From Hemiscyllium ocellatum (lineage: Eukaryota), in NCBI RefSeq assembly GCF_020745735.1, contig NC_083424.1, positions 27,638,999-27,702,998 of the forward strand: a DNA stretch of 64,000 nt, read 5' to 3'. The notes under the pieces were generated by a model, which worked only from the letters and a program-made list of their open reading frames with translations, was not told the origin of the DNA and made no database searches. The position numbers were made by a program, and so were the translations under genes. Numbering within the stretch: the first letter of the stretch is position 1; every line of letters begins with the position of its first letter. Positions 16,430 to 60,707 of the stretch are shown here, piece by piece.

Positions 16430-18530
16430 TGGGAAGAATTGTCGAACAAAGAGACCTTAGGGAGCATGTTCAAAGTTCCTTGATAGCGGAGTCACAGGGG
16501 ATAGACAGGGTAGTGAAGAAAGGATTTGGTATGTTTGCTATACCATTATGTATAGGCGTTGGGAGGTCTTGTTGTAGCTGTACAGGACATTGGTTAGACT
16601 ACCTTTGGAATACTGTGTTCAATTCTTGTCTCCTTGTTATAGGAAAGATGTTGTGAAACTTAAAAGGGTTCAGAAAAGATTTACAAGCCGGTTGCCAGGA
16701 TTGGAGGATTGAGCTATCGGGAGAGGCTGAATAGGTTGGGGCTATTTGCCCTGGAGAGTTGAAGGATGAGGGGTGACCTTATAGGAGCTTATAAATCATG
16801 AGAGGCATGGATAGTGTGAATAGTCAAGGTCTTTTCCAAGGGTAGGAGAGTTCAAAATAGAGGATATAGGATTAAGGTAAGAGGGCAAAGGTTTAAAAGG
16901 GGCCTAATGGGCAATTGTTTCACACAGAGGGTGGTGCGTGCATGAAATGAGTTGCTAGATGTGGTGCTGAAGGCTGGTACAATTACAACATTTAAAAGGT
17001 ATCTGGATGATATATGAATAGGAAGGTTTTAGAGAAATATGGGCCAAATGCTGGCAAATAGGACTAGATTAATTTTGGGTATCTGGTCTATTTCTGTGCT
17101 ATACATCTTAGAGTGTCACTATTTAAGAAAGGTGGTAAGGAAAAGCCAGGGAACTACAGACCGGTAAGCCTGATATCAGTGGTGGGAAATTTGTTGGAGG
17201 GAATCCTGAGGGACAGGATTAACAAAAATTTGGAAAGGCAAGGACTGATTAGGGATAGTCAACATGGTTTTGTGCATGGGAAATCATGTCTCATGAACTT
17301 GATTGAGATTTTTTTGAAGAAGTAACAAAGAGGATTGATAAGGGCAGAGCGGTAGACATAATCTATATGGACTTCAGTAAGGCGTTCAACAAGGTTCCTC
17401 ATGGGAGACTGGTTAGCAGATTTGGTCTCATTGAATAAGGGATAACTAGCCATTTGGATACAGAACTGGTTCAAAGGTTGAAGACAGAGGGTGGTGGCGA
17501 AGGGTTGGTTTTTTAGAATGGAGGCCTGGATCCACTGCTTTTCGTCATTTATATAAATGATTTGGATGTGAACATAGGAGGTATGGTTAGTAAGTTTGCA
17601 GACAACACCAAAATTATAGGTGTAGTGGACAGCGAAGAAGGTTACCTCAGAGTACAACGGGATCTTGATCAGACAGGTCAATGGGTTGAGAGTGGCAGGT
17701 GGAGTTTAATTTAGAAAAACGCGAGGTGCTGCATTTTGGAAAAGTAAATCAGATCAGGGCTTATACACTTAATGGTAAGGTCCTGGGGAGTGTTGATGAA
17801 CAAAGAAACCTCTGAGTGCAGGTTCATAGTTCCTTGGAAGTAGAGTTGCAGGTAGATAGGATAGTGAAGAAGGTATTTGGTATGCTTTCCTTTATTGGTC
17901 AGAGCATTGAGTACAGGAAGTGGGGAGGTCATGCTGTGGCTGTACAAGACATTGGTTAGGCCACCGTTGGAATATTGCGTGCAATTCTGGTCTCCTTCCA
18001 ATTGGAAGGGTGTTGTGAAACTTGAAAGGGTTCAGAAAAGATTTACAAGGACGTTGCCAGGGTTGGAGGATTTGAGCTGTTGGGAGAAGCTGAATAGGCT
18101 GAGGCTGTTTTCCCTGGAGCGTTGGAGGCTGAGGGGTGACATTATACAGGTTTATAAAATCATGAGGGTCATGGATAGGATAAATAGACAAGGTCTTTTC
18201 CCTGGGGTGGGGGAGCCCAGAAGAGCTCATACATTTACGGTGAGAGGGGAAAGATATAAAAGGGACCTAAGGGGCAATATTTTCACACAGAGGGTGGTGC
18301 ATGTATGGAATGAGCTACCAAAGGAAGTGGTGGAGGCTGGTACAATTGCAACATTTAAAAAGACATCTGAATGGGTATACGAATAGGAAGGATTTAAAAG
18401 GATATGGATCAAGTGCTGGCAAATGGGACTATATTAGGTTGGGATATCTGTTCAGCATGAACGAGTTGGTCCGATGGATCTGTTTCCATGCTGTACATCT
18501 CTATGACTCCATCTGTATGATTCTATGATA
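16430..18530 (+). mobile_element. Two tandem CR1 (HER1-like) fragments (about 16430-17105 and 17113-18530)
   Basis: Repeated RT and C-terminal motifs and 3' UTRs. Confidence 0.88.
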
Positions 18531-18832
18531 CTTTCAGAATTAGGTAGCAACTATAGTTACAATCCCTTGTTTTTATCTACCACCTGTTTAAAATCTTGAA
18601 ATCATATTTAATAGTTGCAATTTGCATGTGCAAATCAAGATTTGGTTTAACACTTTATATGATTTAGACGAATGAGAGATGATCTCACTGAGACATTTGG
18701 GATTCTTAAGAGGTCTGCTGGAGTAAATCTTCCAGTAAAAAATGAGGTCTGCAGATGCTGGAGATCACAGCTGCAAATGTGTTGCTGGTCAAAGCACAGC
18801 AGGCCAGGCAGCATCTCAGGAATAGAGAATTC

Positions 18833-18860
18833 GACGTTTCGAGCATAAGCCCTTCATCAG
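18833..18860 (-). ncRNA. Minimal hammerhead ribozyme motif (mirror copy)
   Basis: Exact reverse complement of 18871-18898. Confidence 0.75.
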
Positions 18861-18870
18861 GAAGGGCTTC

Positions 18871-18898
18871 CTGATGAAGGGCTTATGCTCGAAACGTC
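18871..18898 (+). ncRNA. Minimal type-I hammerhead ribozyme motif (Penelope-type)
   Basis: CTGATGA-A-GGGC-TTAT-GCTC-GAAA-CG-TC; flanking ttc/gaa can form a short stem I. Confidence 0.75.
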
Positions 18899-19659
18899 GA
18901 ATTCTCTATTCCTGAGATGCTGCCTGGCCTGCTGTGCTTTGACCAGCAACACATTTGCAGCTGCTGGAGTAAATGTTGAGTTGATGTTTTCCCTCATGGG
19001 AGAGTCTAAAACCAGAGTTCATAGTCTCAGGATTCAGGGATGTCAATTTAAGACAGAAATGAGGAGGAATTTCTTATCTCAGTAACTTGTGAGTTTTTGG
19101 AACTTCTTGCCACTAGGAATTATGGGGGCAGAGTTAGGTGAATCAAAAGTTATGCGTAAAGGCAGAGAAGTGGATATGAGGTATGCTGGATAAGTCATGA
19201 TGGTATTGAATGGTAGAGCAGGCTCAAGGGACTGAACATTAGATAAGCAAGAGGCTGAAAGAACACAGCAAGCCAGGCAGCATGAGGAGGGAGAGAAATC
19301 AACATGTCGGATGTAACTCTTCTTGAACTGAACAGCCTATTTCTGTTCCTATTTTGCATAATCTTATTGTTAAGTATCGGAATTTTGTCCGTGCTTTCTA
19401 AGAAGCTTAGTCTAAAAGTCAAGTAACTTCGGGGTGTAAGTTAGCAGCCTTAAAATTGTTCCCTCCTGTTTTTTCTTTCTTATTCTAATTTCAAATCATG
19501 AATACATGAAGGCTGAAGAGCGTTTAAATCACACTATGGTTCAACATGCCATATAAAGTGACATGTTATTTCCTTGATATAAGCATTGGTGATTCGGATT
19601 TAAAAGAAAACATCTTTTAATCAAAGGTAAAGGGGCGATATCAATTATAAATATTAGAA

Positions 19660-19812: not shown

Positions 19813-19860
19813 ATGCCTCGCTTTGCTCAACTCGTGATGGGGCCTGCAGGCAGTGGGAAG
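19813..19860 (+). CDS. GPN3: GPN3 coding exon 1 ([17 protein letters not shown]-loop)
   Basis: ATG at 19813; donor AAG|gtattt; CpG-rich context. Confidence 0.96.
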
Positions 19861-22800: not shown

Positions 22801-25800
22801 TCAGATGGTTATCCCTATCTTCACAGGTCTTATTGGATAACTGAATGAAAACCGAAAATGCTGAGCTGTGTGCAAACAAATATCAGCCCCACTAATTTTG
22901 GGAAGTGTGCTTTGTTTTATATACCATGGTTATTTTCTTTTTTTAAAATTACTGTTGTCTAAATTTTTTTTTGGTAGATATTCGGGAGCTCATTCAAGTA
23001 GATGACGTGATGGAAGATGATTCCTTGAGGTTTGGCCCAAATGGTGGGCTGATTTTCTGTATGGAATACTTTGCCAACAACTTTGATTGGCTGGCAGATT
23101 GTCTAGGACATGTGGAAGATGACTATATACTATTTGATTGTCCAGGTGGGTGGCAATCGATATGTGCGATGGAATAGTCCATTATGCAGTTTATGTTTAG
23201 TAGGATTGTGCAGAAAACTAGGTTCAAGATTAGAGTGGTGCTGGGAAAGCATAGCAGGTCAAGTAGCATCCAAGGAGCAGGAAAATGAGGCTCATTCATG
23301 ATAAAGGGCTTTTGCCCGAAACATCGATTTTTAAAAAAAAATTATTATTTTTTATTTTTCCCCTGCTCCTTGGATGCTGCCTGATCTGTGCTTTACCAGC
23401 ACCACTCTAATCTCCAGCATCTGCAGTTCCCAGTTTTGCCTTATGCAGAGACTAACCTAAACTCAAGCGTGGGTCAGCTTTATCACAGTTATTTGGTTAT
23501 CAGTTATAGATATGAATGCGTGAAGACCATAATGAATCTTGGAGTTGGAAGCCAGTGCCCCTGCTGTTAATGTAAAGTGTTGAAGGTCCTGGCACTGCAT
23601 TTAAGGGGTACTCAGAGAGGCATGTGCCCTGCAAGCCGATAACATCTCATGCTCTTAGGTGGACACCTGCAGCTGAACATTTTGGCCCAAATATATTCCT
23701 CTGTCGCTTGACGAGACAGTCCTTTCAGCCTTGCCCATTCTACTCCAGTCTCCGTCTCTTGGTCTGTGCCCTGTGCAACTTAGACTATTGCCATCCAATC
23801 TCAATCATGGTATGGCAGAGATGAAGATTTTTCCAAAGAAGCCAAAACTACTCTCTCCAAAATCCACTAAGTACACTACTTTGCCTGCTGCATGCCGCTG
23901 GTATGTTGGGAAACTTAAAGAAGAAAACTGAAGAACTATTGCTGAGAGAATGCCCATTGTGGCTGTGCAGGTTCTTTGCAAGCTATCTAGTTAATCCCAC
24001 TGTCAGCTTTTATTTTAATGTTACTGTTGAATATATTTGCACCACTTCTTTAATGTGGTGGAAACCAAATGACACTTTGCCAGAAGCAAAATTCCCCTCA
24101 TCTCACCTCTGGTGTTTTTCTGATTACGTTACATCCCTGTTTGCAAGTTAAACTCTCTTTCTTCTTGGGCTATAAGTGCAATTAATTTATTGCATTTAAT
24201 CTAGTGTATTTGATTAAGCACAGTAAAATTTATAATCTTATCAAAGTAGTAGTCTTTCATTTAGAACAAATAATTAGAGTTTCTAGAATACCAATTTTGA
24301 GCTCTTCCTGTTGTTTTCCCCTCACTTCCTGAAGGTACTGATTCATGAAAGGTGATGATAAGTTGAACACATTTTTACATGAGAATTTTAACTGAGCCCA
24401 TTATATGTAATAAGTTTTGATTTTGGGTCTCCAAATTTTTTTTGTACTAATGTGATTTTATTAATTCATTACAGGTCAGATTGAGTTATATACTCACCTT
24501 CCAATAATGAAGCAGCTCGTGGAACAGTTGCAGCAATGGGAGTTTCATGTCTGTGGGGTATTTCTTGTTGACTCTCAATTTATGGTGGAGTCATTTAAGG
24601 TAATCTTCACCTATGTAGTGTGAAGTGGGATTTATATACAGCAAACTCTATTTTAGCCAACACTCTGTGAACTATGCTTTTGATTTAAATGGCAAAACTT
24701 ATGTACCTCAAATACCAGAAGTTTTATTGTGATCTCCACAATGTCTGAGTAGACAGTTGTGTGCAAGTGAGAAGGTATCTCTGCTGGTAAGTTTTAATCA
24801 AGGCAAAATTGCATTATTGTTTGTGTATGCTGTAAATAAAGTACACGTTTCTGTTGAAGAGCTTATGCTCGAAATGTCGACTCTCCTGCTCTCAGATGCT
24901 GCCTGACCGGCTGTGCTTTTCCAGCACCACGCCCTTCGGCTCTGACCTCCAGCATCTGCAGTCCGTACTTGCTCCCTGTAAATAAAGTATCCAAGGTGTC
25001 ATAACCTTGAAATCAAGATAGAGTCCACACTCTCAGCTTGTGCTCAAAATACAGCATTACAGAATCAAGACACTGCCAAGCAGACAAGGCGACAGAACTA
25101 CAGCACGTACATGCACACCAAGAACTAGAAACTGGAGAAACCTGGCATCGCCACCAGCAGCAGCCAAACCTCCCCTGGCACCACAGTTGAAAATATTATC
25201 ACCATGGGGAAATCTATCGTCAACTTTTCGGATCACACCCTTTAACCAGAAGAGATTGAAATTCTCAGCCAAGGGCTCAATTTTTGCCCCACCACCAAAA
25301 TGGACCCCTTTGGTCTTACAGCAGACACGGGAGGAATTCATCAGACAAATGAGACTCTGGGAATTCAAGATGTCAGCAAGCCAGCAGAAAAAGGTGGAGC
25401 CATCATCATTCAGAATAGAATGGGCTACTGCAAGGAAGTATACTGACAATTGAACAACTAGGAACACTACAGGCAACTAGTGGCCAATCTGACCAAAGGA
25501 CACACCCGTGAACTAAACGCATTGATCAAGACTTTTGATCCAGTCCTTGAGTATCTACCCACTCTCATCCCACATACTTCTCACATAGGGGACTTTTACT
25601 GCCTTCCACAGATACACAAAGTCAACACATCTGGTTGTCCCATTGTGTCAGGCAACGGAACAGTGTGTGAGAATCTCTGACTATATCAAGGGCATCTTGA
25701 AACTCATTTTACAGGGGGCCCCCATCTTCTGTCGCAATACTAGATTTTTACAGAAGCTCGGCTCCCATGGACTAGTCGAACCGGGAACATTCCTCGTCAC

Positions 25801-28800: not shown

Positions 28801-31800
28801 TTCATGGGATATGGGCATTGCTTGTCTAGAAAGTGATATACTTGGAATTATGTTTTGTAGGCTAGTGGAGATTGACATTAGGAGTATTCAAAATTCAGTT
28901 GTGTGCTGGACACTTTTCACAAATCAGCCTTTCCTTCACCTTGACACTTGTATGAACATACTTGAATAAAGGATTCATTTAAATTGTAGATACTGTTAAA
29001 ATATTACATACTTAAGGATGTGGGCATTTGTTTGGATACTTCCTGGATGGGGATTGGTAGTGGCTGGACAGAGACTCTCCATTGCTTTCTGGTAGTGTTT
29101 TATTTTGTAATTGCTGTGATGCCTGCAAAATATTCTCTTTTTTTTCCCTTTTCTGTCAGCATGCCCTTCCCAGTATAGAGTACACAATATGGACTTGGGT
29201 TGAAAAATGTGTTGCTGGAAAAGCGCAGCAGGTCAGGCAGCATCAAAGGAGCAGGAGAATCGACGTTTCGGGCATAAGCCCTTCTTCAGGAAGAAGAATA
29301 AACCCTAAAGAAGGGCTTATGTCCAAAACGTCAATTCTCCTCCTTTGATGCTGCCTGACCTGCTGCGCTTTTCCAGCAACACAGTTTTCAGCTCTGATCT
29401 CCAGCATCTGCAGTCCTCACTTTCTCCTTGTTGGGCTTGGGGCAGTATTGGGATCAAACTGTGAGATTTTCCTGTCTTAAAATAAGTTCAAAAACTGCCA
29501 TGCTGATGGGCAAATAACAAGGAGGTACTTTTTGTTTATATATACATGTATGATGGGGCATTATCCTATTGGAGAGCATTTGCAGTAATTTGTTCTTAGT
29601 TATCCTAATGGAGTAGTTTGCACATTTTTTTTCTGACAAAGTATTTTACATTTTTGCATGTTTGAGGGCTTTTTTTTATAGATATTTTTATTGGGAATTT
29701 AACATTTTGACAAATTTACAAAAATAAGCAGAATTTTCAAGCACAAACATTAATATAAAAATAGATCTTAAATATATAATCATCAAAATTCAACTAATCC
29801 ACAATCATCCAGAGTGTATAGTTGAGTCGCTTACATCCTTCAAATAAGAGAAAATGTTCTCTAATACACTCATAACTGTATGATTAAAAGGAAGCTATTT
29901 CCAAACAATAAGAACAAACAAAAAAAAATTAAACATGTTTGAATGGAGATCTTCCCCCTTGAGGGCATTTTTAATGAAGGAAGTGTTACCTTCAAATGAT
30001 TTGCTTTTTACAATACTTGTGATATTTTCAAAGAAAAGACATGCATTTATGTCTCACCTTCTAAATCATTAGAACTCGAGTGTTTTAAATGCATTATTTG
30101 TAATGCAGGAAACCATTTAATTGGTAACTGGTAAGGTCCCACTAACAGTAATGTGAAAATAACCAATGAGTTTATATTTTAGTCTTGTTGATTGAAAAAT
30201 AATTTTTTCTAGGAGTTTGGAGAATTTGAGGTGGAGACAGGCCATCAGCATAATATCTTCTCCAAAAGGTGGCACTAGTGTGTTATTTTGATATCGTGCT
30301 CAAGTCTGTGGCATGGGCTAATACCTTATGACTTTGTATAGTTTGCAGTGTCATCCCTGGAATGTAATTCCCAACTATAACACAGGGCAATCGGAAACAA
30401 TCTGGGGTTGCTTCAGGTCATAAAATGCTAAAATTGTTTTCAGTTTCTAGTGTAGACTTCTTAAAACAACAAAGGTACTATAATTTGAAGATTCACTTTA
30501 TAAAACACTATCAAGATGGATTTTTTTTACATGTTTTGAGTTTTTATGTCGGTAATATTTCCTGATGTTCTTTCATTTAAAGGTATTTAGACCCTGATAT
30601 GTATTCATTGATGCAAGACTCTACTGAGACTTGGAAAAGCAAGAAATTCAAAAAGCTAACCAAAGCAATTTGTGAATTGGTAAGAATTGTACCATACTCA
30701 ACGAAGCTAAGTTCTCATTAACATCAAAAATTCTCTATTTAAATTAACTGGTCTCAGAATAAAAAATCCTATATACAGTCATTTTGTTTGTGCAAATAAA
30801 TATTCTATGTAGCATTAGTAAAACATTAACCGGAATGAAGGTTAGTATTACCAGAGAAAGTTGAGAGAAGATTTAATAAGTGATCAAAATGATGGACGTT
30901 TTAATGGAGTAAATAAGGGGAACTATTTCCATTGGCTGAGTTTCAATAATTGGAGGATGGAGATGTAAAATCACTGCTGATTAGGACTGTGTTGCTGCAG
31001 CAAATTGAACATACACTTTCTGTAAAGCCAATGGTTATTGTACTGCAGTTATCATTTTTATTGAGGGTCACGGCAAAGCAGTGCATGGAGAGTTGCAAGA
31101 AAGGTTTGGGTGCTGTCTGTGACTTTTATACAACGTGGAAACAGACCTTTCAGTCCAACTAGTCCACGTTGACCATGTTCCCAAAGTAAACTAGGCTCAC
31201 TTGCCTGAATTTGACCCATATGCCTCTCAACCTTTCCTATTCATGTACTTATCTAAATGTCTTTTAAATGTTGTAACTGTACGTACATTCACCACTTCCT
31301 CTGGTAGTTCATTCGCCACAAAATGTTGCCTGTCATGTCCTTTTTAAAACTTTCTCCCCTCTCCTTAAATATATGGCCTCCAGTTTTGAATCTACCAACC
31401 TAGGGGAAAGAGCCTAGCTATTCACCTTATCTATGTCCCTCATGATTTTGTAATCCTCTATACGGTCACTCCTCAATTTCCTACACCCCATAAGAAATGT
31501 CCCGGTCTATTTTTATAACTCAAACCCTCCATTCCCAGAAACATGCTGGTAAATATTTTCTGAATCTTCTCCAGTTTAATAATATCCTTCCCAGTGTAGG
31601 ACAACCAGAGCCGTGCACAGTACTCTAGAAGAGGGTTCACCAACATCATACCACTACTATTATTTCCAAGCAAACTGGAGACACAGTATAGACATGCCAT
31701 GACTATAAAATTTCAAGCCAATTTAATGAAAAAAAACCAAGGTACTAATGAGAATCCAGTGTTGATTTTAAACTGAGCTTTTCTTAAATGTCAGTATTTT

Positions 31801-33191
31801 GAACTTTCTGAAAATAACTCAAAGTACTAGTGTTTTTTTTCTCTAAGAACATACCACTTTTGCATATTGTTTCTTATAATGTATTACTAAATAATGGTCA
31901 AATGCTATTCTGAAAATCCTCTAGTGAAAATTATATTTATGGTTACACATTGTCAAAATGGTGCTATTAAAACATTTGATAATGAGTGTCAACAATTGTC
32001 TTTTAAGGTTGATGACTACAGCATGGTTCGATTTTTGCCTTTTGATCGTTCAGATGAAGAATGTATTAACATAGTCTTGCAGCATATTGACTTTTCCATT
32101 CAGTATGGAGAGGATTTTGAAGTCAAAGAACCAAAGGTGAGTGATACATGACTTCTTTGTATAGGAATTTTCCGGTGATACTGTTTTCCCCCAACACCAA
32201 TTCTCACTCAGTTTAATGATAGGATTCCTCTAAGATGAATGTATTCCATGACTGATTAGTGACACGTTAAAGTAATTTAAGCATGATGTCATCTTTTATT
32301 CCTTATTCACCAAACTGACCAAGAACTAGATTCACTAATTCCACCACAGCAGATTGAAATTGGTTTTAATTGCCAGATCTGTGATTCAGTCTGTGGCTTG
32401 AAAGCCAAGTATGTAATAATAATATCAAATTTCAGCTACAATACCTCTTAAAATTGAATAATCTGCACATGTGTACTGTGTAGGGTTACATAAAGAATAC
32501 GTACGGGAATGAAATACTATAGGGTTCATGACTCCTATGGAATCCCAAGTTGAGTTCATGCTTTTTAGGACAGAGGAGGAAGCATTTAATTTTCTGCAGA
32601 TAATTATGCTGTAACCATGTAAGGTGATATAATACTATAAATGAGTACCTGGCTTTAATGTATTCTCTTTTTCAGCTTTTATTTTGTTTTTCTTTGGTTA
32701 TCTTTGGAACTCAAAACAAAACGGAATTAACTTACTATAAAGATACACTTACTATTTAAGATTTAGTTGAGTTACTTTGCTGCGTAATATATATTAAGAC
32801 TTTTAACAATTATTTCAAGGTATGCAGGTGAGGTCATCAGTTTTTTCCCTCCTTAATTGTCCTTGAGATATGTAACCTGTTCAGTTATAAAGATCTGCTG
32901 AAGTTGCTGGAGAAACTCAGCAGGTCTATCAGCATCTGTAAAGAGAGAGAAGCGTTAACATTTTGGGTCCAGTGTCCCTTCTTCCCTGCTTTCTCTCTAC
33001 AGATGCTGCTAGACCTGAGTTGTTCCAGCAATTTCTGCAGTTCTTTGGGTTTTTTTTAAAATTTCAGTTTTTCAGAACTTGTTTGCACAGTTACATTTAC
33101 CATTGGCTCCTTTTATTTACAGGAACAAGACGACAACACTGAAGATCCCAGTGCAAGTGAGCAGTTTTTCCAAGGTTCAGTCGCAGACTGA
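19813..33191 (+). CDS. GPN3: GPN-loop GTPase 3, complete spliced gene: join(19813-19860,21703-21811,22978-23145,24475-24599,28390-28505,30583-30679,32008-32136,33123-33191), 286 aa
   Basis: Hand-spliced exons total 861 nt with all GT-AG junctions. Protein: [22 protein letters not shown]...VVNLDPAAE...FGPNGGL (GPN loop)...[12 protein letters not shown]...[12 protein letters not shown], close to the recalled human GPN3 sequence. Confidence 0.98.
20925..21663 (+). mobile_element. Two HE1-family SINEs in GPN3 intron 1 (about 20925-21272 and 21363-21663)
   Basis: tRNA-like heads, central domain, and tails (ttctatga)n and (taatc)n respectively. Confidence 0.88.
21703..21811 (+). CDS. GPN3: GPN3 coding exon 2 ([36 protein letters not shown])
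   Basis: tttcag| acceptor; G|gtgagt donor. Confidence 0.97.
22978..23145 (+). CDS. GPN3: GPN3 coding exon 3 ([31 protein letters not shown]...FDCP)
   Basis: ttggtag| acceptor; CAG|gtgggt donor; contains the GPN motif. Confidence 0.97.
23228..23445. mobile_element. Inverted-repeat Penelope-end mini-element, GPN3 intron 3
   Basis: Arms gattagagtggtgctgg...caaggagcagg and cctgctccttgg...ccagcaccactctaatc; degenerate hammerhead (GGGCTTTTGCCCGAAACATC). Confidence 0.7.
24475..24599 (+). CDS. GPN3: GPN3 coding exon 4 ([42 protein letters not shown])
   Basis: ttacag| acceptor; AAG|gtaatc donor. Confidence 0.97.
24844..24975 (+). mobile_element. Penelope-end mini-element (degenerate hammerhead) with 14-bp TSD
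   Basis: ctgtaaataaagta at 24830-24843 and 24976-24989; same gatgctgcctgacc...ccagcatctgcagtcc terminus as the other copies. Confidence 0.75.
25010..26992 (+). mobile_element. Degenerate Penelope-like retroelement (RT plus hammerhead-bearing terminus), split by an HE1 SINE
   Basis: Frameshifted RT motifs [11 protein letters not shown]...[21 protein letters not shown] and (H)IDDIFFLW; CTGATGAAGGAGCAGTGCTCTGAAA at 26566. Confidence 0.8.
26630..26930 (+). mobile_element. HE1 SINE inserted in the Penelope terminus
   Basis: Near-full-length HE1; the host sequence gttggac(t)ataacc|tggtgttg resumes after the tail. Confidence 0.9.
27240..27930 (+). mobile_element. Possible solo LTR remnant
   Basis: Non-coding block ending gtctgggatctgacttg...taccaccatc, resembling LTR ends I recall from shark genomes; termini and TSD not resolved. 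Confidence 0.3.
28390..28505 (+). CDS. GPN3: GPN3 coding exon 5 ([38 protein letters not shown])
   Basis: tttttag| acceptor; AA|gtaagc donor. Confidence 0.97.
29262..29289 (-). ncRNA. Minimal hammerhead motif inside an inverted-repeat mini-element (about 29200-29428), GPN3 intron 5
   Basis: Minus strand reads CTGAAGA-A-GGGC-TTAT-GCCC-GAAA-CG-TC. The plus-strand partner copy is degenerate (CTAAAGA...CAAAACGTC). Confidence 0.7.
30035..30340 (-). mobile_element. Old Deu-domain-like SINE remnant (SacSINE1/AmnSINE1-like)
   Basis: Degraded matches to the recalled consensus (tgcattta..., tgtaatgcaggaaa, aaggtcccac.aacag, gtgctcaagtct). Confidence 0.4.
30583..30679 (+). CDS. GPN3: GPN3 coding exon 6 ([33 protein letters not shown])
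   Basis: tttaaag| acceptor; TTG|gtaaga donor; phase matches exon 5. Confidence 0.96.
31075..31645 (-). mobile_element. CR1 3' fragment in GPN3 intron 6
   Basis: [16 protein letters not shown]...KLEKIQK plus 3' UTR. Confidence 0.75.
32008..32136 (+). CDS. GPN3: GPN3 coding exon 7 ([43 protein letters not shown])
   Basis: ttttaag| acceptor; AAG|gtgagt donor. Confidence 0.97.
33123..33191 (+). CDS. GPN3: GPN3 last coding exon ([22 protein letters not shown])
   Basis: ttatttacag| acceptor; short acidic tail like the GPN3 C-terminus; TGA at 33189-33191. Confidence 0.88.
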   Translation, partial: EQDDNTEDPSASEQFFQGSVAD

Positions 33192-39960: not shown

Positions 39961-41133
39961 GGTAACTAATCATCCTGGAGATTTTTTTACTTTGGCTTCA
40001 CGTGCATCAATGTTATTTTATTAAGACAAGGCAAGTAAAATCTTATAATACAGATCATCCTGCCATGCAATGATCAATCAGGTTCATACTTACACTTTAG
40101 CTGCAATAAACCTTATTGAGTGTAGATGAGAAGGGAAAGATATAAAAGGAACCTAAGGGGTAACTTTTTCAAGCAGACGGTGGTGCCTGTATGGAATGAG
40201 CTGCCAGAGGAAATGGCGGCTGGTACACTTAAAGTATTTAAAAGGCATCTGGATGGGTAAACTGAATAGGAACAGTTTGGAGAGATTTGGGCCTAATGGT
40301 GGAAAATTGGGATATCTGGTTAGTGTGGATGAGTTGGACAAAAGGATCTTTGTGCTGTATGACGACAAGTACCTCTTGTTTTCTGCCTGTGCACCAAATT
40401 CTCACAGAAACCTGGTCACTACTTTGTGTTACTCCAGGTGGATAGTTACCTAACACTTTACCTCTTACTCCCTGCTCTCACAGAAGGGCAAATCATCATG
40501 GTGCAATCCCTCACCCACTAGCCTACTGCCCCTGTCCCCATTGCAACAGCGTGCCAGCCTTGCCCCACCCACACCCCAATATCAAATCTGGCTCCAGCCC
40601 AGCCACCTTCCTGTAGTGCTGGTAATGGCCACCACTCCTCGTAGCTCTGTGAATACTGAACAGCTGCCAGTGTCTGATTAGTCTCTGCTTTCTCTGGTGA
40701 GTCTTCCATTTCTAAGAAACAGAAGACCCATTCCCTGACTTGTTAGCTGGCGAGGGCATGGGGACCAATGCGTCTTGTTAAATTCAAATGTTGTACACTT
40801 GGGACAAACAGTTGATTCTTGGACCCATGTTTCCAAAACATTCTGCCAGTGGAAATTCTCCCTGTCTTATGTTTGACAATTGTTAGATTAGTATTCAACA
40901 GCTCCATCATGGTCTACTTTGGTCTACTTAACAGACCATGGTTGAATTGATCGTTTTTCATCTAGCAATTCCTAAGTTCCAACATACTAAGAAATTAATT
41001 AAAAGAATTGTCACATCTAGATTTCTTGGCAGACCTAAGAAGAATGACAAACTTCAGTAACCCTTGTAGAAAATAAATGTAATGTTTAATTGCTTGTACT
41101 AATTTCTCAGTATACTTAACTATATTACTTTTA

Positions 41134-43480
41134 GGAGAAAGTGAAGACTGCACATGCTGAAGATCAGTAGAAGAGTGTGGTGCTGGAAAAGCACAGCAGG
41201 TCAGGCAGCATCTGATGAGCAGGAGAGCTGACATTTCGAGCATAAGTCCTTCAGCAGGAATGAGGGGTGGCCCAAGGGGTCTGAGAGATAAGTGGGTGGG
41301 GGGTTGGGGCTGGGGGGTGGGGGTAGGTAGTTGGGAACATGATAAGTAAATGAAGGTGGGGTGAAATTGATAGGTCGGAGAAAGAGGTGGAGTGGATATG
41401 TGGGAAGGAAGATTTATAGATAGGACAGCTCAAGAGGGCATACCAAGTTGGAAGGTTGGATCTGGGATAAGGTGGGGATAGGAAAAACGAGGAAACAGGT
41501 AAAATCCACATTGATCTCATGTGGTTGGAGGGTTCCAAGGCAGAAGATGAGGCACTCTTCCTCCTAGTCTGGTGGCTCGGGTTTGTCCTTGGTAGAGTGC
41601 GGTGTATGGGGGGGGGGTTTAAAGTATTCAGCCACAGGGCAGTGGGGTTGTTTAGTGCATGTGTCCCAGAGATGTTCTCTGAAATGTTCTGCAAGTAGGC
41701 GTCCTGTCACCCCAATGTAGAGGAGACCACATTGAGAGCAACGGACACAGTAGATGACGTGTGTGGAAATACAGGTGAATGTTTGTCAGATGTTCATGGA
41801 CACCTCTTCCTATTACCCTCTTGACCACAACCTCATCTCCCATCACCAAACTATCAGCTCCCAGACCATCCACAACCTCATTACCTCAGGGGATCTCCCA
41901 CTAACAGCTTCCAACCTTATCTAGCAATCCCACACTGCCCAGTTCCACCTCCTATCTAAAATTCATAAATCTGACTGCCTCGATTGACCCATCATCTCTC
42001 GCCCCACTGAACTTATCTGTGCATGCCTTGACAACACCCTGTCCGCCTTGGTCCAGGAACTCCCCACATAAGTTCAGGATACCACCCACACCCTCCACCT
42101 CCTCCATGATTTTCAATTCCCTGGCCCCAACACCCCATCTTCACCATGGACATCACTGCCTGTATGCATCCATCTGCCATGACAAAGACCTCCAAGCCCT
42201 CCAGTTTGTCCCCTCCCGCCGACTCAACCAGTATTGTTCCACTGACATTCATTCGATTAGCAAAACTGGTCCTCAGCCTCAACAATTTCTCCTTTGAATC
42301 CTCCTACTTCCTCCAGACAAAAGGGGTAGCCGTGGGCATCTGCATGGGTCCAAGCTATGCCTGCCTCTTTGTCTGGTATGTGGAAGAGTCCCATCTTCTG
42401 CAGCTACACTGGCATCATTCCCCTTTTCCTCTGTTACATCGATAATTGACTGTATCGGTACCACTTCATGCTCCCACAAGAAGGTTGAACAGTTCATGAA
42501 CACCTTCCACCCCAACCTCAAGTTCACTTGGACCATCTAGAACACCTCCCTCCCCTTCCTGGACCTCTCCATCTCCATTTCCAGTGACCAATCCAACACA
42601 GACATCTACTACAAACCCACCGACTCCCACCCTACCTCCTGTAAAAACACTATCCCTTATTCCCAATTTCTCTGCTTCTGCTGCACCTTCTCCCAGGAGG
42701 ACCAATTCCACCACAGAACACCCAGCTAGCAGCCTTCTTCAAAGACTGCAATTTCCCCTCCCACGTGGTCAGCAATGCCTTCCACTTCCCACACTTCTTC
42801 TCTTGAACCCCACAGTTTCAATTGCAACAAGGTCAGAACTACCCTGGTCTACACTTTCCACCCCACCAACCTCCGGATATATTGCATCATCTTCCGCCAT
42901 CTACAAACAGACCCCACCACCAGGGATGTATTTCCCTCCCCTCCTCTGTGTTCTGGAGAGACCAGTCCTTCTATGACTCCCTTGTTAGGTCCACACCCAC
43001 CCTGAACTTGCAGCATTTTGCCTGTCACTGCAAAAAGTGCAAAATCTGCACCCACACCTCCCCCCTCACCTCAATCCTAGGCCCCAAAGGATCTTTCCAC
43101 ATCCTGTACTTCCACGCACGTCATCTACTGTGTCCATTGCGCTCTGTGGTCTCTACGTGGGATGATAGGATGCCAACTTACAGAATATTTCAGAGAACAT
43201 CTCTGGGGGACACGCAAAACAACCTCACCCCGCTGTGGCTGAACACTTTAACTTCCCCTCTCCTACTGCCAAGGAAATGCAGTGGAGGAAGAATGCCTCA
43301 TTTTCCACCTTGGGTCCCTCCAACCACACGGGATCAATGTGGATTTCACCAGTTTCCTCATTTTCCCCTCACCCCACCTTATCCCAGATCCAACCTTCCA
43401 ACCTCTCACTGACCTCTTGAATTGTCCTACCTGTCCATCTTCCTTCCCATCTATCACCTTCACCCCCATCTCGTCATAAT
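41134..43480. mobile_element. Penelope-like retroelement: + strand RT-GIY-YIG body (about 41800-43480) preceded by an inverted copy of its own 3' end (about 41134-41790)
   Basis: RT motifs LNNFSFESSYFLQTKGVAVGICMGPSYACLF and YIDN; GIY-YIG region HVIYCV...FREHL on + (about 43110-43330) and on - (about 41500-41775). Confidence 0.85.
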
Positions 43481-55500: not shown

Positions 55501-58500
55501 TAGTTGATTGTCATTTATAATGTATGTCCACAGAATTGATTGTTCATGATCATGTGTATTCTGGTTACTTTTTCAGAGATGATGAGGGGTTATTTGCAGC
55601 AGATCAGGCAAGAGACTGGACTGAGACTTTGTGAAAAAGTGTTTGACCAACAGACTGACAAACCCAGCAAGGTAAGCAGCTGGATTTTGGACTTGAAATT
55701 ATGACTGTCATTTATATTTGCTGCTTGCCTAAAAGATTAAAGCAGTAAATTAACTGCCACAAAAAAAGTTAACCACAGCCATTGGTTTTAAAGGGCGGGT
55801 TAGAATCCTACTGGGATATAGGATGGGACTGCAGAAATGAAAAGAAATAAAAATTAAAAGCGGGCCATACCACCAGTGCTTCACCGGAGCCTCTCTGATG
55901 ATGTTACCTAGTATGGTGATGAAACGTCTGAAAACGAACCTTCCAGCTCAGTGAGCAAGCTTACATCTAGGACAGGACTGTGTTCCAGGGGACTGCTGGG
56001 AAGTTTTTGAGAGTAGGCTAAATGGACCAATGGTTTTCTCCTGCCTGGACTTTTTTTTGACATATTCTTGTTGAGTTCTCAGCCCAAAGACAAGTCAGTT
56101 GACGCAGTACTGCAACCTCCATTAGAAGGAGGCACCTGAGCTGGAATTGGGAATGAATTCAGTACTATTGGGACCAACCTGAACCACATTGGCTGTGCAG
56201 TTAACTGTGCCCGAAGAAGTCCGAATTACTGTGGCAATATACACTTTTATGTACATGTTGCTGTCTGAAACTACGGATAGTGATGATAGAGGCTTTAATC
56301 ACTTGCTGCCAAATGACTGACCAAAAAAAAAATCACTCCTTTTACCATTTACTATTGGAATTTTTGGAAGGAATTCCAGATTGATACTCAAACTGTTTAG
56401 CCAAGTTATGAATGCACTTGCCTTAACCATCAAGTCCTGGAGTGGGACTTGAAAACCGAGATTCAGACTTAGGCAGGGTCAAACCACAAGACCTCCTATG
56501 GTAATAAAATACAGGACTCCTTTTGGTTTGGTCCATTAGTGTGATATTGTATTTATTCAGTGCCAACAGGACAAATATTTATACGTGCTATCCTAGAAAG
56601 AGGCTGCCACTAAAACAAAATGGCTGATTCAAACTGCGTATTAATGAAATGAGCCATATCCTATGGTGCCTGTCAGTGATGGGAAGCAATAAAACAAGAT
56701 GGTTTTAGACTGGATCATAGTTTCATCTAATATTACTGTGCTTCCTAAATCCAAATTAATTTTCAGCACTTCTTTTTCAAAATCATCTACCATGAATAAT
56801 GTATCAAACTTAACCTTAAAAAGTAACTTCTATTTTATAGCTTCACTTACTCTCAGCAATTTATTAAATTGCACGACCTATGTGTTCTACTAAACTTTAA
56901 ATTTGCTTTGATATTTACCTTTTTTTTGAAAAATATTTATAGAATTGTTCTTTTTGCAATTATTGTGTGACATGACATGGTAAATGATTTCTCTGGTGAC
57001 TTAATAGTTTATTTTTAACAGGAGTCTTCTGTTTCCTGAATACAAGCAGTACTTAAGTTAAGCCCTTTGCAAAACTTGTCTGACCCAAGTCAAGTAGCTT
57101 TAAATAACCATTGGGAAGTGTGGAGTAATTTCTCTTTAACATTACTAAATATTACCAAGTATGTGATAAATTTAAGTTTTGTATTTTTATTTATAATAAA
57201 TCCTACAATATACCATAAAGTAGTGAGACCACACCTAGGGTACTGCATATGGTTTAGATCTCTTAATATATTAGAGATCTATTTAGTCATTGAGATGTAC
57301 AGCATGGAAACAGACCCTTCAGTCCAGCCCGTCCATGCTGAACAGATATCCCAATGCAATCTAGTCCCACCTGTCAGCACCTGGCCCATAACCCTCCAAA
57401 CCCTTCCTATTCATATACCCATGCAAATGCCTTTTAAATGTTGCAATTGTACCAGCTTCCACCACATCCTCTGGCAGCTCATTCCATACACGTACCACCC
57501 TCTGCGTGAAAAAGTTGCCCTTTAGGTCTCTTTTATATCTTTCCCCTCTCACCCTAAACCTATGCCTTCTAGTTCTGGACATTTGCATTAGAAGGAGTTG
57601 AGAGAAAGTTCAATAAGTTGATTCTTGGGATGAAAGGGTTACCTTGTGGGAAAATATTGAGCAGGTTGAGCTTGCATTCATTGAAATTTAGCAGCATGTG
57701 TGATGATGAGGTTTTCCCTCATTGTGGGGCATTTAGAAGTACAGGCAGAGTTTCAAGAAATGGGTCTCCCATTTAAGATACAAATAAATCCTCCTCTTGA
57801 GAAGGTATTAATTTTTGGAATTCTGTAATCCAGCGAGTAGTGGTAGCTAGGTGATTGAATATATTTGAGGCTAAATTAGGCTGTCATTTGATCTACAAGG
57901 GATCTAGAGTTCTGGGGAACAATAGGAAAATGGAATCAAGGTCCAGTCATATCAACAATGACCTTATTGAATGGCAGAGTAGATTTGAGGGACCAAATAA
58001 TCTATTCCTGCTCCTGTTTCTTACTTTAAATCATTTTGTTTGGAAAGTCTGACATTTTCAACATCTCACTGGAGAACAATTTTGCTCTTTGATTTTATGG
58101 TGAGAAGATGGCTGATGAGATGCAGAACAAAGATTTTTTTTCTGTAATTACCAATGGGACTTAACCTTTGTAAACCTACTGCATCACCTTCTTAAAATTT
58201 ATACATGGGATATTGGTATCACAGGCTAAGCCAGCATTTATTGCTCATCCCTAATTGCTTGGACAGCAGTTAAGATGAAACTACTTTGCTGTGGTTCAAG
58301 AGTCTCATAATAGCCAGACCAGGTAAGTATGGCAGATCAATAATTTTAGAATTTGAACACCACCACCTACGTCCTTCACCTACCTCAACATTCCAGGCCT
58401 TGTCATTATATTCTTTATTTCCTGAAGAAGGGCTTATGCCCGAAACGTTGATTCTCCTGTTCCTTTGATGCTGCCTGACCTGCTGCGCTTTTCCAGCAAC

Positions 58501-60707
58501 ACATTTTTAAGCCCTGTCATTATATGGGTTGCTTGCTTTTGCTTGAAACGTCGATTTCGCTGCACTTTGGATGCTGCCTGAACTGCTGTGGTCTTCCAGC
58601 ACCACTGATCCAGAATCTGGTTTCCAGCATCTGCAGTCATTGTTTTTACCTGCTTGCAGCACAGCCAACCCATTTTCACCTAATTATGGTCCCATTGTAC
58701 GCTTTCTTTCTCCCTAGCATATTATAATCCATCACTTTACCTAACTGTTATTTCCTTTCTGGACTTTATTTCCATTTATCTGCTTAGCACCCCCTTCCAA
58801 CTCACCCCACCCACCCACACGAATTGTTCAGCAAATATACCTCTTTTCCTAGCTCCTGTCAGTTATGAAGAAGAGTCACTAGAAACATTAGTTCTGCTTT
58901 CTCTCCACAGATGCATCCCAACCTATTGAGTTTCTCCAGTAATTTCTGTTTTTAAGGATGGCAGATTTCCTTCCCTGAAGAACATCAGCGAACCAGTTGG
59001 GTCTTTACAACAATTGACAGGTCACATGATCAGCATTTGACTTTTTCCCCCCAGTTTCCCACCATCTGTCATAGCCTCAGAACATTAGCTTGGATTCTGG
59101 ATTACTAGTGTAATGACGTTACCTCTGACCCCCCCACCTCCCTCTGATACATTTGTATTGTCTTACAGGCTTTTTTCAGAAATTAGATTTCTTCTTTTCA
59201 TGTTGTCAACATATGCAGGAAGTGGATTCAAACTTTACAAACTTAATTCATGCCATATCAATAAAGTGTTTTAATTTTATAACCCCTGGATATAACTGCC
59301 TTGGTAAAAATGTAGTATTAGCCGCCACTCAGTCCTTTTGTTTTTGCATTATGTTTAAATATAAACATTTTATGTTTTGAATAATCATAAAGAACATTAG
59401 TTATTTGCATTGTTTTCAAAATCTATTGTATTTATCAGTTCAGAGTATTTTGTCAATTTTCTGCCATCACCTTCTAGAAACATAGTTGATGGTAGAGTTA
59501 GATATTTGTTTGAGTATCAATGGTTAATGACATTAACTGGGAGATTGTTTGGCCCCCAAGCTTTCTTTCTCTAATGTCTTTCTTTTCTGGTCCCTCATGC
59601 AAGTGAAACAAATACTGAAATTAAATAAGCACAGTACTGGAATTGAACGTAAAATTAGATTAGTTTAGATTCCCAACAGTGTGGAAACAGGCCCTTCGGC
59701 CCAACAAGTCCACACTGACCCTCCGAACAGTAACTCACCCAGACTCATTTTCCTCTGACTAATATACCTAACACTGTGGGCAATTCAGCATGGCCAATTC
59801 ACCTTACCTGCACATCTCTGGATTTGGGATAAACCAGAGCACCCGGAGGAAACCCACGCAGACACGGGGAGAATGTGCAGACTCCACACACAGTTGCCCG
59901 AGGCTGGAATCAAACCTGGGTCCCTAGTGCTGTGAGGCAGCAGTGCTCATCACTGAGCCACCATGCCACCCCTATTGGTGATATATAAAGTGCTCAAATT
60001 CTGTGTATTAATACACTTATAAATAATGCTTGCCTAAAATGTTTCTGAAGTTTGATGCAGATCAGAATATTGAAATTTATGTAGGTTTCTACAATTTTTT
60101 AAGAATGTGGATTTCAGGGCCTTTTATGACACAGCAATCCACAGAAAATCTGGAGGATGTTCTCCATTTTTGAGTTGTCTCAGGAATCCAAATCTTGTCA
60201 GAAATCAGAATATTTCTTCCATCATTTAAGAATGGTTCTTGATGGGATTAAAGAAGGAGCAGTACTGACATTGTTTCCTTCTCCAAACTAAAAGACAACT
60301 TTAGGGAATGTTAAGATGAAGAATTAAAGATAAAATTATTTATAGACTTTTACATGATGGATGTTTCACCTCGGGTGAGGAAAACTGACCTAATCTGAAT
60401 TATTATATCATGTTTTCCTTAATTTTTTAGAGGATTATTTATGCAATAATGAAGTCACCTGCAGTTTACTCCTATGAGAGGAGGATGGTTTATTTAACAT
60501 ATTTGTTTTTTTTAAATAGGGTTGTAGGGGAAGAACATGTTCTCTGGTTGACTCTTCCCTTTTGCATTTCATGGTTGCAGATGATATGATTTTAAACTAA
60601 TGAGAATGGAACAGAGAATCTTAATTTTCTTTTTGTCTTTCTAGTGGTGGACATGTTTTATAAAGAAGCAGTTCATGAACAAAAGCCTGTCAGCACCAGG
60701 ACATTAA
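46522..60707 (+). CDS. ARPC3: Actin-related protein 2/3 complex subunit 3 (p21-Arc), complete spliced gene: join(46522-46527,48499-48598,50515-50591,54209-54277,54689-54815,55577-55671,60645-60707), 178 aa
   Basis: Spliced CDS of 537 nt, all GT-AG. Protein: [120 protein letters not shown]...[24 protein letters not shown], same length as recalled human ARPC3. Confidence 0.98.
46910..48480 (+). mobile_element. CR1 (HER1-like) LINE filling most of ARPC3 intron 1
   Basis: [16 protein letters not shown]...[11 protein letters not shown]...; tail ctctatgactcta ends about 18 nt before exon 2. Confidence 0.92.
48499..48598 (+). CDS. ARPC3: ARPC3 coding exon 2 ([33 protein letters not shown])
   Basis: ctctctcag| acceptor; A|gtaagt donor. 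Confidence 0.97.
50515..50591 (+). CDS. ARPC3: ARPC3 coding exon 3 ([26 protein letters not shown])
   Basis: ttttccag| acceptor; AAG|gtaagt donor. Confidence 0.97.
51250..53460 (-). mobile_element. Fragmented CR1 LINE in ARPC3 intron 3 with nested insertions
   Basis: [16 protein letters not shown] and LDFQKAFDK on the minus strand; 3' UTR near 51250-51800. Confidence 0.75.
51348..51604 (+). mobile_element. HE1 SINE, 5'-truncated
   Basis: Central domain and (taatc)n tail. Confidence 0.85.
54209..54277 (+). CDS. ARPC3: ARPC3 coding exon 4 ([23 protein letters not shown])
   Basis: ACTAAC branch-point match upstream; ttttgtag| acceptor; AAG|gtaaga donor. Confidence 0.97.
54689..54815 (+). CDS. 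ARPC3: ARPC3 coding exon 5 ([42 protein letters not shown])
   Basis: ttatacag| acceptor; G|gtatga donor. Confidence 0.97.
55577..55671 (+). CDS. ARPC3: ARPC3 coding exon 6 ([32 protein letters not shown])
   Basis: tttttcag| acceptor; AAG|gtaagc donor. Confidence 0.97.
55895..55928 (+). ncRNA. Minimal hammerhead motif of a second Penelope-end family, ARPC3 intron 6
   Basis: CTGATGA-T-GTTACC-TAGTAT-GGTGAT-GAAA-CG-TC; 6-bp stem II with two G-U pairs. Confidence 0.65.
57284..57580 (-). mobile_element. CR1 (HER1-like) 3' end inserted in an older + strand CR1 (about 57220-58020)
   Basis: [36 protein letters not shown] plus 3' UTR. Confidence 0.85.
58422..58449 (+). ncRNA. Minimal hammerhead motif in a Penelope-end mini-element, ARPC3 intron 6
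   Basis: CTGAAGA-A-GGGC-TTAT-GCCC-GAAA-CG-TT. Element flanked by tgtcattatat at 58401-58411 and 58515-58525. Confidence 0.65.
59655..59971 (-). mobile_element. HE1-family SINE, full length
   Basis: Reverse-complement tRNA head, central domain and (aatct)n tail. Confidence 0.88.
60645..60707 (+). CDS. ARPC3: ARPC3 last coding exon ([20 protein letters not shown])
   Basis: gtctttctag| acceptor; TAA at 60705-60707. Confidence 0.97.
   Translation, partial: WWTCFIKKQFMNKSLSAPGH

What the first reader, a model, noticed from the sequence alone, without database searches (positions are those of the whole stretch)
18715..18974. Young perfect palindrome carrying a hammerhead ribozyme on each strand, inserted with a 14-bp TSD upstream of GPN3
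Seen: two 97-bp arms (18768-18864 and 18867-18963) are exact reverse complements separated by 2 nt. Each reads ttc-CTGATGA-A-GGGC-TTAT-GCTC-GAAA-CG-TC-gaa. That is the hammerhead core (CUGANGA...GAAA...UH) with a 4-bp stem II, a 3-bp stem I, and stem III reduced to the self-complementary ACGU. The insert splits a CR1 fragment and is flanked by ctgctggagtaaat twice; the right arm ends in a ctg microhomology with the TSD. Known: Penelope-like elements carry minimal hammerheads that cleave as dimers through a palindromic stem III, can form inverted terminal repeats, and a viroid hammerhead tolerates an extra A after A9. Inference: this roughly 230-bp non-coding, strand-symmetric element was mobilised recently by Penelope machinery. 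It would give the same ribozyme-containing hairpin RNA from either strand and could form a cruciform about 850 bp from the GPN3 ATG.
Basis: partly seen in the sequence, partly recalled or inferred. Interest (0 to 1): 0.85.

Follow-up and report, generated by a model that had tools for sequence, protein, structure and literature searches.

The report
Young head-to-head Penelope stub insertion
This is a real, recent 232-bp insertion made of two head-to-head copies of the last ~100-140 bases of a very abundant Penelope-like retrotransposon family, each carrying a minimal hammerhead ribozyme motif; its shape is the published insertion signature of that transposon class, so it is a clean example of a known kind.

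Summary
Two 97-bp arms (18768-18864, 18867-18963) are exact reverse complements around a 2-nt GG spacer. An exact 14-bp target duplication flanks a 232-bp insert. Each arm carries a motif that meets every feature of the published minimal hammerhead of Penelope-like elements (PLEs).

The arms belong to an interspersed family with about 17 hits in this window. Five loci are head-to-head pairs. The insert is not strand-symmetric: the left copy runs 39 nt further (18729-18767), and the right arm stops where other short copies of the family stop. That is the PLE hallmark of an inverted copy with a 30-40-bp "tail" at one end only.

A contig from a related species bridges a precise empty site, and all six CpGs in the arms are intact, so the insertion is young.

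Rfam hammerhead models give no hit, which is expected because the motif has no helix III. A transcript of the whole insert would fold into a ~97-bp hairpin (about -200 kcal/mol) that buries the ribozyme core. No cleavage, expression or regulatory effect is shown.

The same scan reached this verdict before on other windows of this genome. It is a new member of a known kind, of low to moderate interest.

The parts
18715..18728 (.). Left copy of the 14-bp target-site duplication (ctgctggagtaaat)
   Evidence: Exact direct repeat with 18961-18974. It is present once in the related species' empty-site contig (X9 record 28).
18729..18767 (-). 39-nt 'tail': the 3' extension of the left (minus-strand) copy, absent from the right arm
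   Evidence: It aligns to the 3' part of other long family copies at 24846-24975, 29301-29430 and 41131-41263. Its length fits the 30-40-bp one-sided PLE tail (PMC8557442, PMC3846280, PMC11167929).
18768..18864 (-). Left arm of the palindrome (family copy in minus orientation)
   Evidence: 100% complementary to 18867-18963. nhmmer hit 18732-18864 (-), E=8.5e-38.
18833..18860 (-). Minimal hammerhead motif on the minus strand
   Evidence: Exact pattern match. Passes the min-HHR descriptor script.
18865..18866 (.). GG spacer at the head-to-head junction
   Evidence: Short contigs holding this junction occur at multi-copy depth in two species.
18867..18963 (+). Right arm (family copy in plus orientation). 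It ends at the family's short, tail-less 3' terminus.
   Evidence: nhmmer hit 18868-18964 (+), E=7e-27. Its end, 4-7 nt after CACATTT, matches the short copies at 58412-58510 and 29198-29294.
18871..18898 (+). Minimal hammerhead motif on the plus strand, with predicted cleavage after C18898
   Evidence: The features match PMC4209133.
18961..18974 (.). Right copy of the 14-bp target-site duplication. Its first 3 nt (ctg) are shared with the arm.

Best explanation
One recent retrotransposition event by Penelope-like element (PLE) machinery placed two head-to-head, ORF-less copies of the 3'-terminal ~100-140 nt of a very abundant PLE-derived family into a LINE-like repeat 0.84 kb upstream of a GPN-loop GTPase gene. 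The target was cut with a 14-bp stagger, which gave the duplication. The left copy starts at the family's long ('tailed') 3' terminus and the right copy at the short ('tail-less') terminus about 39 nt upstream. Both run to the family's usual 5' boundary, just upstream of the hammerhead, and meet with 2 filler nucleotides. Most likely (inference, about 55:30 over snap-back) each nicked DNA strand primed its own reverse transcription at one of the two adjacent internal start sites known for a PLE enzyme in vitro. The hammerhead motif is inherited from the active master copies, where it presumably acts as a dimer in tandem transcripts. At this locus it is passenger sequence. Shown: the anatomy, family membership, the empty site and the motif's integrity. 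Inferred: the priming mechanism, ribozyme activity and any effect on the host.
For: The arms are exact and the 14-bp duplication is exact. The window holds 17 nhmmer hits to the family. Head-to-head pairs lie at 18732/18868, 23215/23292, 29198/29301, 32903/32996 and 63046/63100. In pairs A, B and C one arm is tailed and the other tail-less. The tail-less termini cluster 4-7 nt after CACATTT in three copies (A right arm, 29198-29294, 58412-58510). Tailed termini lie 13-20 nt after CTGCAG, which gives a tail of 35-41 nt. Duplications at other copies vary in length and sequence, from 10 to 15 bp. The related species has a bridging empty-site contig (X9 record 28). Many contigs diverge into unrelated sequence just before 18868, so this is a common 5' boundary of the family (loose ends and joints). 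The motif meets all min-HHR features (PMC4209133). The literature describes an inverted 5'-truncated copy adjacent to the element and a 30-40-bp tail at one end only (PMC8557442, PMC3846280). A purified PLE protein nicks and extends both strands and starts reverse transcription at two adjacent internal sites that delimit the tail (PMC11167929). Words of 18898-18963 have summed depth near 1e6 in species A runs but only 0-31 in species B, which fits a lineage-specific young subfamily.
Against: No PLE RT/GIY-YIG gene was found in the window. The three ORFs of 200 aa or more have no Pfam domain, and shorter ORFs were not scanned. The link to an autonomous PLE therefore rests on insertion signatures and the motif, not on a shared sequence with a coding element. 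Rfam hammerhead models do not match. By the 31-letters-each-side rule, no independent contig bridges the palindrome centre or the right junction at this locus. The identical inner ends of the two arms would follow automatically from snap-back, so twin priming is not proven for this copy.
Confidence: 0.82

Rival explanations
1. Same PLE insertion, but the palindrome arose by snap-back (self-priming). The first cDNA, started at the tailed site, reached the RNA 5' end, folded back and copied itself. The element's endonuclease, or microhomology (ctg), then resolved the hairpin at the tail boundary.
For: The arms end at exactly the same nucleotide at the centre, with only 2 nt between them. Arkhipova et al. 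interpret palindromes at inverted PLE junctions as self-priming (PMC3846280). Craig et al. attribute the tail to endonuclease-mediated resolution of the intermediate (PMC8557442).
Against: The right arm's outer end coincides with the tail-less terminus seen in independent single copies, which snap-back alone does not predict. In the pairs at 23215/23292 and 32903/32996 the inverted arm is 5'-truncated by about 45 nt relative to its partner, and at 29198/29301 the inner ends differ by about 12 nt. Snap-back would then need large loops. 18868 is a common 5' boundary of the family, so equal inner ends are also expected from two full-length cDNAs.
Confidence: 0.28
2. The palindrome itself is a master unit: a strand-symmetric hairpin element that is transcribed and retrotransposed as a whole.
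For: Short contigs containing the GG-centred junction, with 9-23 nt on each side, have depth 67-415 in X1, 120-1000 in X4 and 32.8 in X5. Single-copy contigs in those runs have depth about 14-16, 29-58 and 3-5. Such contigs also occur in species B, which lacks this insert (depth 27-160 against about 11). The same junction therefore exists roughly ten times per genome.
Against: About ten junctions is a tiny fraction of a family whose arm words reach depth near 1e6. Recurrent joining of two full-length copies at the common 5' boundary can explain this. Both outer ends sit at canonical 3' termini, whereas copying a hairpin transcript would leave an arbitrary 5' end on one side. Other palindromes in the window have different centres. 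A hairpin of about -200 kcal/mol is a poor template.
Confidence: 0.08
3. Assembly artefact: a fold-back chimeric read, or a mis-join of two family copies, created the perfect palindrome.
For: PLE tandem and inverted structures are known to trouble assemblies (PMC8557442). By the tool's 31-letter rule, no independent record bridges the centre or the right junction at this locus.
Against: The structure has an exact 14-bp duplication and canonical tailed and tail-less termini, which an artefact would not create. Contigs from two other samples of the species run 4 and 8 nt into the insert at the left junction without mismatch (X1 record 1, X5 record 19). Junction-containing words are present in three samples.
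Confidence: 0.04
4. A DNA transposon or MITE with 97-bp terminal inverted repeats.
For: The repeat is perfectly inverted and flanked by a direct duplication.
Against: The arms abut, so there is no internal sequence. The same sequence occurs as single, one-armed insertions with their own duplications (24844-24975, 58412-58510). Duplications vary from 10 to 15 bp with unrelated sequences. One side carries a 39-nt extension.
Confidence: 0.02

Closest known systems
Canonical insertion architecture of endonuclease-positive Penelope-like elements (Arkhipova et al. 2013, PMC3846280; Craig et al. 2021, PMC8557442)
   Same: [quoted passage not shown]
   Different: There is no ORF and no direct pLTR pair. 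The whole insert is just two 3'-terminal stubs (138 and 97 nt) meeting at the family's 5' boundary, with arms still 100% identical.
Minimal hammerhead ribozymes of metazoan PLEs (Cervera & De la Pena 2014, PMC4209133)
   Same: [quoted passage not shown] That paper also reports pairs of min-HHRs about 100-700 bp apart on opposite strands.
   Different: Helix II has only 4 bp with one G-U (other families have 6-8 bp) and helix I has 3 bp. The two motifs are only 10 nt apart. Activity is untested, and the published min-HHRs cleave poorly even as dimers.
Two-strand nicking and two internal RT start sites of the Anolis Poseidon PLE in vitro (PMC11167929)
   Same: It supplies the parts needed for the proposed mechanism. 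Both target strands are cut and extended, and two adjacent start sites delimit the tail.
   Different: That is an in vitro result on a different PLE. Here only the genomic footprint is seen. The 3-nt ctg overlap at the right junction suggests some primer-template annealing, whereas the in vitro starts were not homologous to the target.
Non-LTR retrozymes (Cervera & de la Pena 2020, PMC7229834; Li et al. 2026 preprint, doi 10.64898/2026.07.22.740005)
   Same: Short, non-coding, hammerhead-bearing derivatives of PLE pLTRs, reported also in a cartilaginous fish.
   Different: Retrozymes are head-to-tail tandem repeats that can release circular RNA between two hammerheads on the same strand. Here the two motifs are on opposite strands, so no unit is bounded by two ribozymes.
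L1 twin priming (Ostertag & Kazazian 2001; from my own knowledge, not checked here)
   Same: The second nicked strand primes a second cDNA, which gives an inverted 5' part within one duplication-flanked insertion.
   Different: L1 twin priming starts internally at arbitrary sites and yields inversion-plus-deletion products, not palindromes. Here both cDNAs start in the 3' region at defined sites.

Membership tests
Penelope-like element insertion | Adjacent inverted (head-to-head) copy forming inverted repeats | tested here: met
   Arms 18768-18864 and 18867-18963. Four further head-to-head pairs of related stubs lie in the window.
Penelope-like element insertion | Optional 30-40-bp 'tail' present at only one end of the insert | tested here: met
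   The left copy extends 39 nt (18729-18767) beyond the right arm's terminus. Short and long termini recur in other copies, and the pairs at 29198/29301 and 23215/23292 are also tailed on one side only.
Penelope-like element insertion | Short target-site duplication of variable length and sequence, with an empty site holding it once | tested here: met
   14 bp exact here, and 14, 15, 10 and 10 bp at other copies. An empty-site contig was found in the related species.
Penelope-like element insertion | Sequence continuity with an autonomous element encoding a telomerase-like RT and a GIY-YIG endonuclease | tested here: inconclusive
   The three ORFs of 200 aa or more in the window have no Pfam hit. 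Shorter ORFs and the rest of the genome were not searched. Earlier notes on this genome list no such ORF.
Minimal hammerhead ribozyme (PLE type) | Conserved core boxes CUGANGA ... GAAA ... UH | tested here: met
   CTGATGA at 18871-18877, GAAA at 18891-18894 and TC at 18897-18898; the mirror image lies on the minus strand.
Minimal hammerhead ribozyme (PLE type) | [quoted passage not shown] | tested here: met
   A18878 is the unpaired nucleotide. Helix II is GGGC/GCTC, 4 bp with one G-T. Feature list from PMC4209133.
Minimal hammerhead ribozyme (PLE type) | No helix III loop and a palindromic 15.2-16.2, so that two copies can pair | tested here: met
   GAAA-CG-TC gives the self-complementary ACGT.
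Minimal hammerhead ribozyme (PLE type) | Self-cleavage, as a dimer | not testable with these tools
   Thermodynamics only. The hammerhead fold of the 40-nt core is -5.1 kcal/mol against an MFE of -8.4, and the whole insert folds as a hairpin of -201/-196 kcal/mol.
Rfam hammerhead families (covariance models) | A match to a hammerhead covariance model | tested here: not met
   No hammerhead hit at E<=10 in 18300-19500 and none at gathering score in the window. This is expected, because the motif has no helix III hairpin (my inference about the models, not tested).
Non-LTR retrozyme | Head-to-tail tandem units, each with a hammerhead on the same strand | tested here: not met
   The two motifs are on opposite strands, 10 nt apart.
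MITE / DNA transposon | Terminal inverted repeats on all copies and a family-specific fixed duplication | tested here: not met
   One-armed copies have their own duplications, and the duplications vary from 10 to 15 bp with unrelated sequences.

The most novel reading that the evidence does not exclude
The GG-centred head-to-head junction is not made afresh at each insertion. It belongs to a palindromic master that propagates as a strand-symmetric, hairpin-forming retroelement, giving roughly ten copies per genome that are already present in the sister species. Such copies near promoters would then act as sources of hairpin RNA or small RNA, or as cruciform-forming sites.
Probability: 0.07. 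Interest if true: 0.6.

Novelty: new member of a known kind. Interest (0 to 1): 0.25.

Why it matters
On its own this is an ordinary, well-preserved example of Penelope-type integration. Its value is as a clean footprint: zero post-insertion mutations, an exact duplication, a precise empty site in a sister species, one tailed and one tail-less arm, and a 3-nt microhomology at one junction. Many such young copies in this genome could be used to test in vivo the two-strand, two-start-site model proposed from in vitro work on a PLE enzyme. A perfect 97-bp palindrome 0.84 kb upstream of a housekeeping gene is also a potential fragile or cruciform site, but nothing here shows any such effect.

Tried and rejected
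- **Rfam, E-value mode, 18300-19500:** it returned only sub-threshold microRNA hits (mir-980 at 32 bits against a gathering score of 47, and others). These are generic responses to a perfect hairpin, so I rejected them as evidence of a miRNA gene.
- **Rfam, gathering mode, whole window:** no hits.
- **Bacterial-type promoter/terminator scan:** it found nothing and is not relevant to a vertebrate genome.
- **Pfam on the three longest ORFs:** no domains, so no autonomous PLE was identified in the window.
- **Second run search on the 70-nt centre:** only 2 sampled words. It shows that species A and B hold them and two RNA runs do not, which is too weak to speak to expression.
- **Second read-laying run at 99% likeness:** no contigs were laid on 18970-18995, so the right junction stays unconfirmed by independent data. 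No record bridges the centre by the 31-letter rule.
- **Post-insertional inverted duplication of a simple stub:** I considered and rejected this. It would have to start exactly at the stub's 5' end and stop exactly at the family's tail-less terminus.
- **Helix II covariation among window copies (GGGC/GCCC, GGGC/GCTC, GAGC/GCTC):** there are too few copies, and the A-T variant sits in a decayed copy, so I did not use it.

Full report
**Observation**

The repeat finder reports arms 18768-18864 and 18867-18963, 97 nt each, 100% complementary, with 2 nt (GG) between them. It also reports the direct repeat ctgctggagtaaat at 18715-18728 and 18961-18974. A duplication-search script confirms that this is the best flanking direct repeat, an exact 14-mer.

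Each arm reads ttc-CTGATGA-A-GGGC-TTAT-GCTC-GAAA-CG-TC-gaa, at 18871-18898 on the plus strand and 18833-18860 on the minus strand.

As single-stranded DNA the insert folds into a near-perfect hairpin of -132 kcal/mol, with z = -27 against shuffles. None of this is chance.

**What the arms are**

The motif-bearing sequence is not unique to this locus. A pattern search finds four more degenerate copies in the window. blastn and nhmmer with a family profile find 17 hits. All copies align from just upstream of the CTGA box through a conserved GATGCTGCCTGACCTGCTG...CCAGCA block.

Copies end at one of two places:
- **The short terminus** lies 4-7 nt after CACATTT. It is seen in the right arm here, in 29198-29294 (-) and in 58412-58510 (+).
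- **The long terminus** lies 13-20 nt after CTGCAG. It is seen in the left copy here and in 24846-24975, 29301-29430, 41131-41263 and 23292-23443.
- The two termini differ by 35-41 nt.

At this locus the left, minus-strand copy is a full long copy (18729-18866), and its 39-nt extension (18729-18767) has no partner. The right arm stops at the short terminus and shares ctg with the duplication. The insert is therefore 232 bp, and it is palindromic only over its inner 196 bp.

**Head-to-head pairs are common here**

Five of about twelve family loci in the window are head-to-head pairs: 18732/18868, 23215/23292, 29198/29301, 32903/32996 and 63046/63100. In the three best-preserved pairs, one arm is tailed and the other tail-less.

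Single copies have their own duplications:
- 24844-24975: 14 bp exact.
- 58412-58510: 15 bp with one mismatch.
- 29198-29430 pair: 10 bp with one mismatch.
- 19239-19324: 10 bp with one mismatch.

The variable length and unrelated sequences of these duplications rule out a DNA transposon with a fixed duplication.

**Comparison with the literature**

- **Cervera & De la Pena 2014 (PMC4209133)** define the minimal hammerhead of metazoan PLEs. [quoted passage not shown] They note pairs of such motifs close together on opposite strands and low cleavage in vitro even as dimers. Every sequence feature is met here, and my descriptor script finds 4 intact motifs in the window against 0 in 200 simulations.
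- **Arkhipova et al. 2013 (PMC3846280) and Craig et al. 2021 (PMC8557442)** describe the typical PLE insert. It carries an adjacent inverted 5'-truncated copy, a 30-40-bp tail at one end only, short duplications, and palindromes at the inverted junction.
- **The 2024 in vitro study (PMC11167929)** shows that a PLE protein nicks and extends both target strands. Reverse transcription starts at two adjacent internal sites that delimit the tail.

The anatomy here is that signature in miniature.

**Rfam**

No hammerhead model matches, even at E<=10, and nothing in the window reaches a gathering score. I think this is expected for a motif without a helix III hairpin, although I did not test that reading of the models. 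The sub-threshold microRNA hits are generic hairpin matches.

**Independent data**

- **Empty site.** Logan contigs of a related species (organism B, run X9) include a 293-nt record covering 18550-18728 and 18988-19065 with 12 letters between. This is a bridging, precise empty site. The flanks of A and B differ by about 4% (25 of 612 aligned letters in three records).
- **Left junction.** Contigs of two further samples of the window's own species run 4 and 8 nt into the insert without mismatch (X1 record 1, X5 record 19). This is suggestive, but it does not count as bridging under the tool's 31-letter rule.
- **Subfamily abundance.** At 99% likeness, words of 18898-18963 have summed depth near 1e6 in species A and 0-31 in species B. 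Single-copy depth is about 14 and 11 in those runs. The particular subfamily is therefore enormously abundant in A and nearly absent from B. Depth is not a copy count, but the contrast spans orders of magnitude.
- **Age.** These results, the identical arms and six intact CpGs all indicate a young, lineage-specific insertion. Older copies in the window have lost their CpGs. I cannot date it in years.

**An unexpected detail**

Short contigs (32-47 nt) containing the GG junction, with 9-23 nt on each side, occur at about ten times single-copy depth in all three samples of species A. They also occur in species B, which lacks this insert. The same junction therefore exists elsewhere in both genomes.

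Many contigs diverge into unrelated sequence just before 18868, which marks a common 5' boundary of the family. Recurrent joining of two full-length copies is thus a sufficient explanation. A palindromic master that propagates as a unit is not excluded, and I rate it at about 7%.

**Function**

A transcript of the whole insert, from either strand, folds into a ~97-bp hairpin of -201 or -196 kcal/mol. In that hairpin the hammerhead core is paired with its complement. The hammerhead fold of the isolated 40-nt core is -5.1 kcal/mol against an MFE of -8.4. The palindromic context should therefore silence the ribozyme rather than display it.

Two RNA runs of the species hold none of the two sampled centre words, which is weak evidence. 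No effect on the neighbouring gene is shown. That gene is a GPN-loop GTPase, with its start at 19813 and a later exon matching PF03029.

**Mechanism**

The PLE origin of the insert is well supported. How the second arm arose is inferred. I favour separate priming from the two staggered nicks at the two start sites, for three reasons:
- The second arm's outer end falls on the canonical short terminus.
- Older pairs have unequal inner ends.
- The enzyme is known to extend both strands.

Snap-back self-priming followed by endonuclease resolution remains a live rival at about 28%.

**Earlier notes of this scan**

Notes on other windows of the same genome reached the same reading: head-to-head PLE stubs with a one-sided tail and variable duplications (s1-175273, s1-178321; s1-146928). 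I derived the tail and terminus pattern independently on this window before reading them.

**Verdict**

This is a new member of a known kind, of low to moderate interest.

Noticed in passing
window 29198-29430: An older head-to-head pair of the same family. The left arm is tail-less and the right arm tailed. The inner ends are offset by about 12 nt, the duplication is TGG[A/G]CTTGGG (10 bp), and the left arm still passes the min-HHR descriptor.
   Followed up: partly
window 23215-23443: A head-to-head pair in the GPN-loop GTPase intron, about 65 bp downstream of the exon encoding the GPN motif. The inverted arm is 5'-truncated at about position 45 and tail-less. The full copy is tailed and carries an A/T-rich internal insertion.
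   Followed up: partly
window 32899-33040 and 63046-63139: Two more head-to-head pairs from older, related stub families that share the GATGCTGC...CCAGCA block. One has a decayed hammerhead and the other has none.
   Followed up: no
window 58412-58653: A short (tail-less) copy with an intact min-HHR and its own 15-bp duplication (one mismatch) lies immediately upstream of an older, diverged tailed copy. It looks like a tandem, but it is a nested or adjacent insertion.
   Followed up: partly
window 18750-18763 vs 18956-18969: The right junction (TGCAG|CTGCTGGAG) matches the element's own tail sequence TGCAGATGCTGGAG at 13 of 14 positions. The target site may resemble the sequence that the PLE endonuclease recognises in its own tail, or this may be chance.
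   Followed up: no
window 18835-18896 (centre): Words spanning the GG-centred junction occur at about ten times single-copy depth in three samples of the species, and also in the related species that lacks this insert. Identical head-to-head junctions therefore exist elsewhere in both genomes.
   Followed up: partly
window 18898-18963: Exact words of this part of the arm have summed contig depth near 1e6 in the window's species but 0-31 in the related species. This points to a lineage-specific burst of this subfamily.
   Followed up: partly
window 18200-18512: The 3' end of a hugely abundant LINE-like repeat (summed depth 1e6-1e7) ends near 18512. Many contigs elsewhere in the genome join this end directly to Penelope-stub sequence.
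   Followed up: no
window 19239-19324: A decayed minus-strand stub of a related family, with a 10-bp duplication (one mismatch), lies 265 bp downstream of the palindrome and about 490 bp from the GPN-loop GTPase start codon.
   Followed up: no
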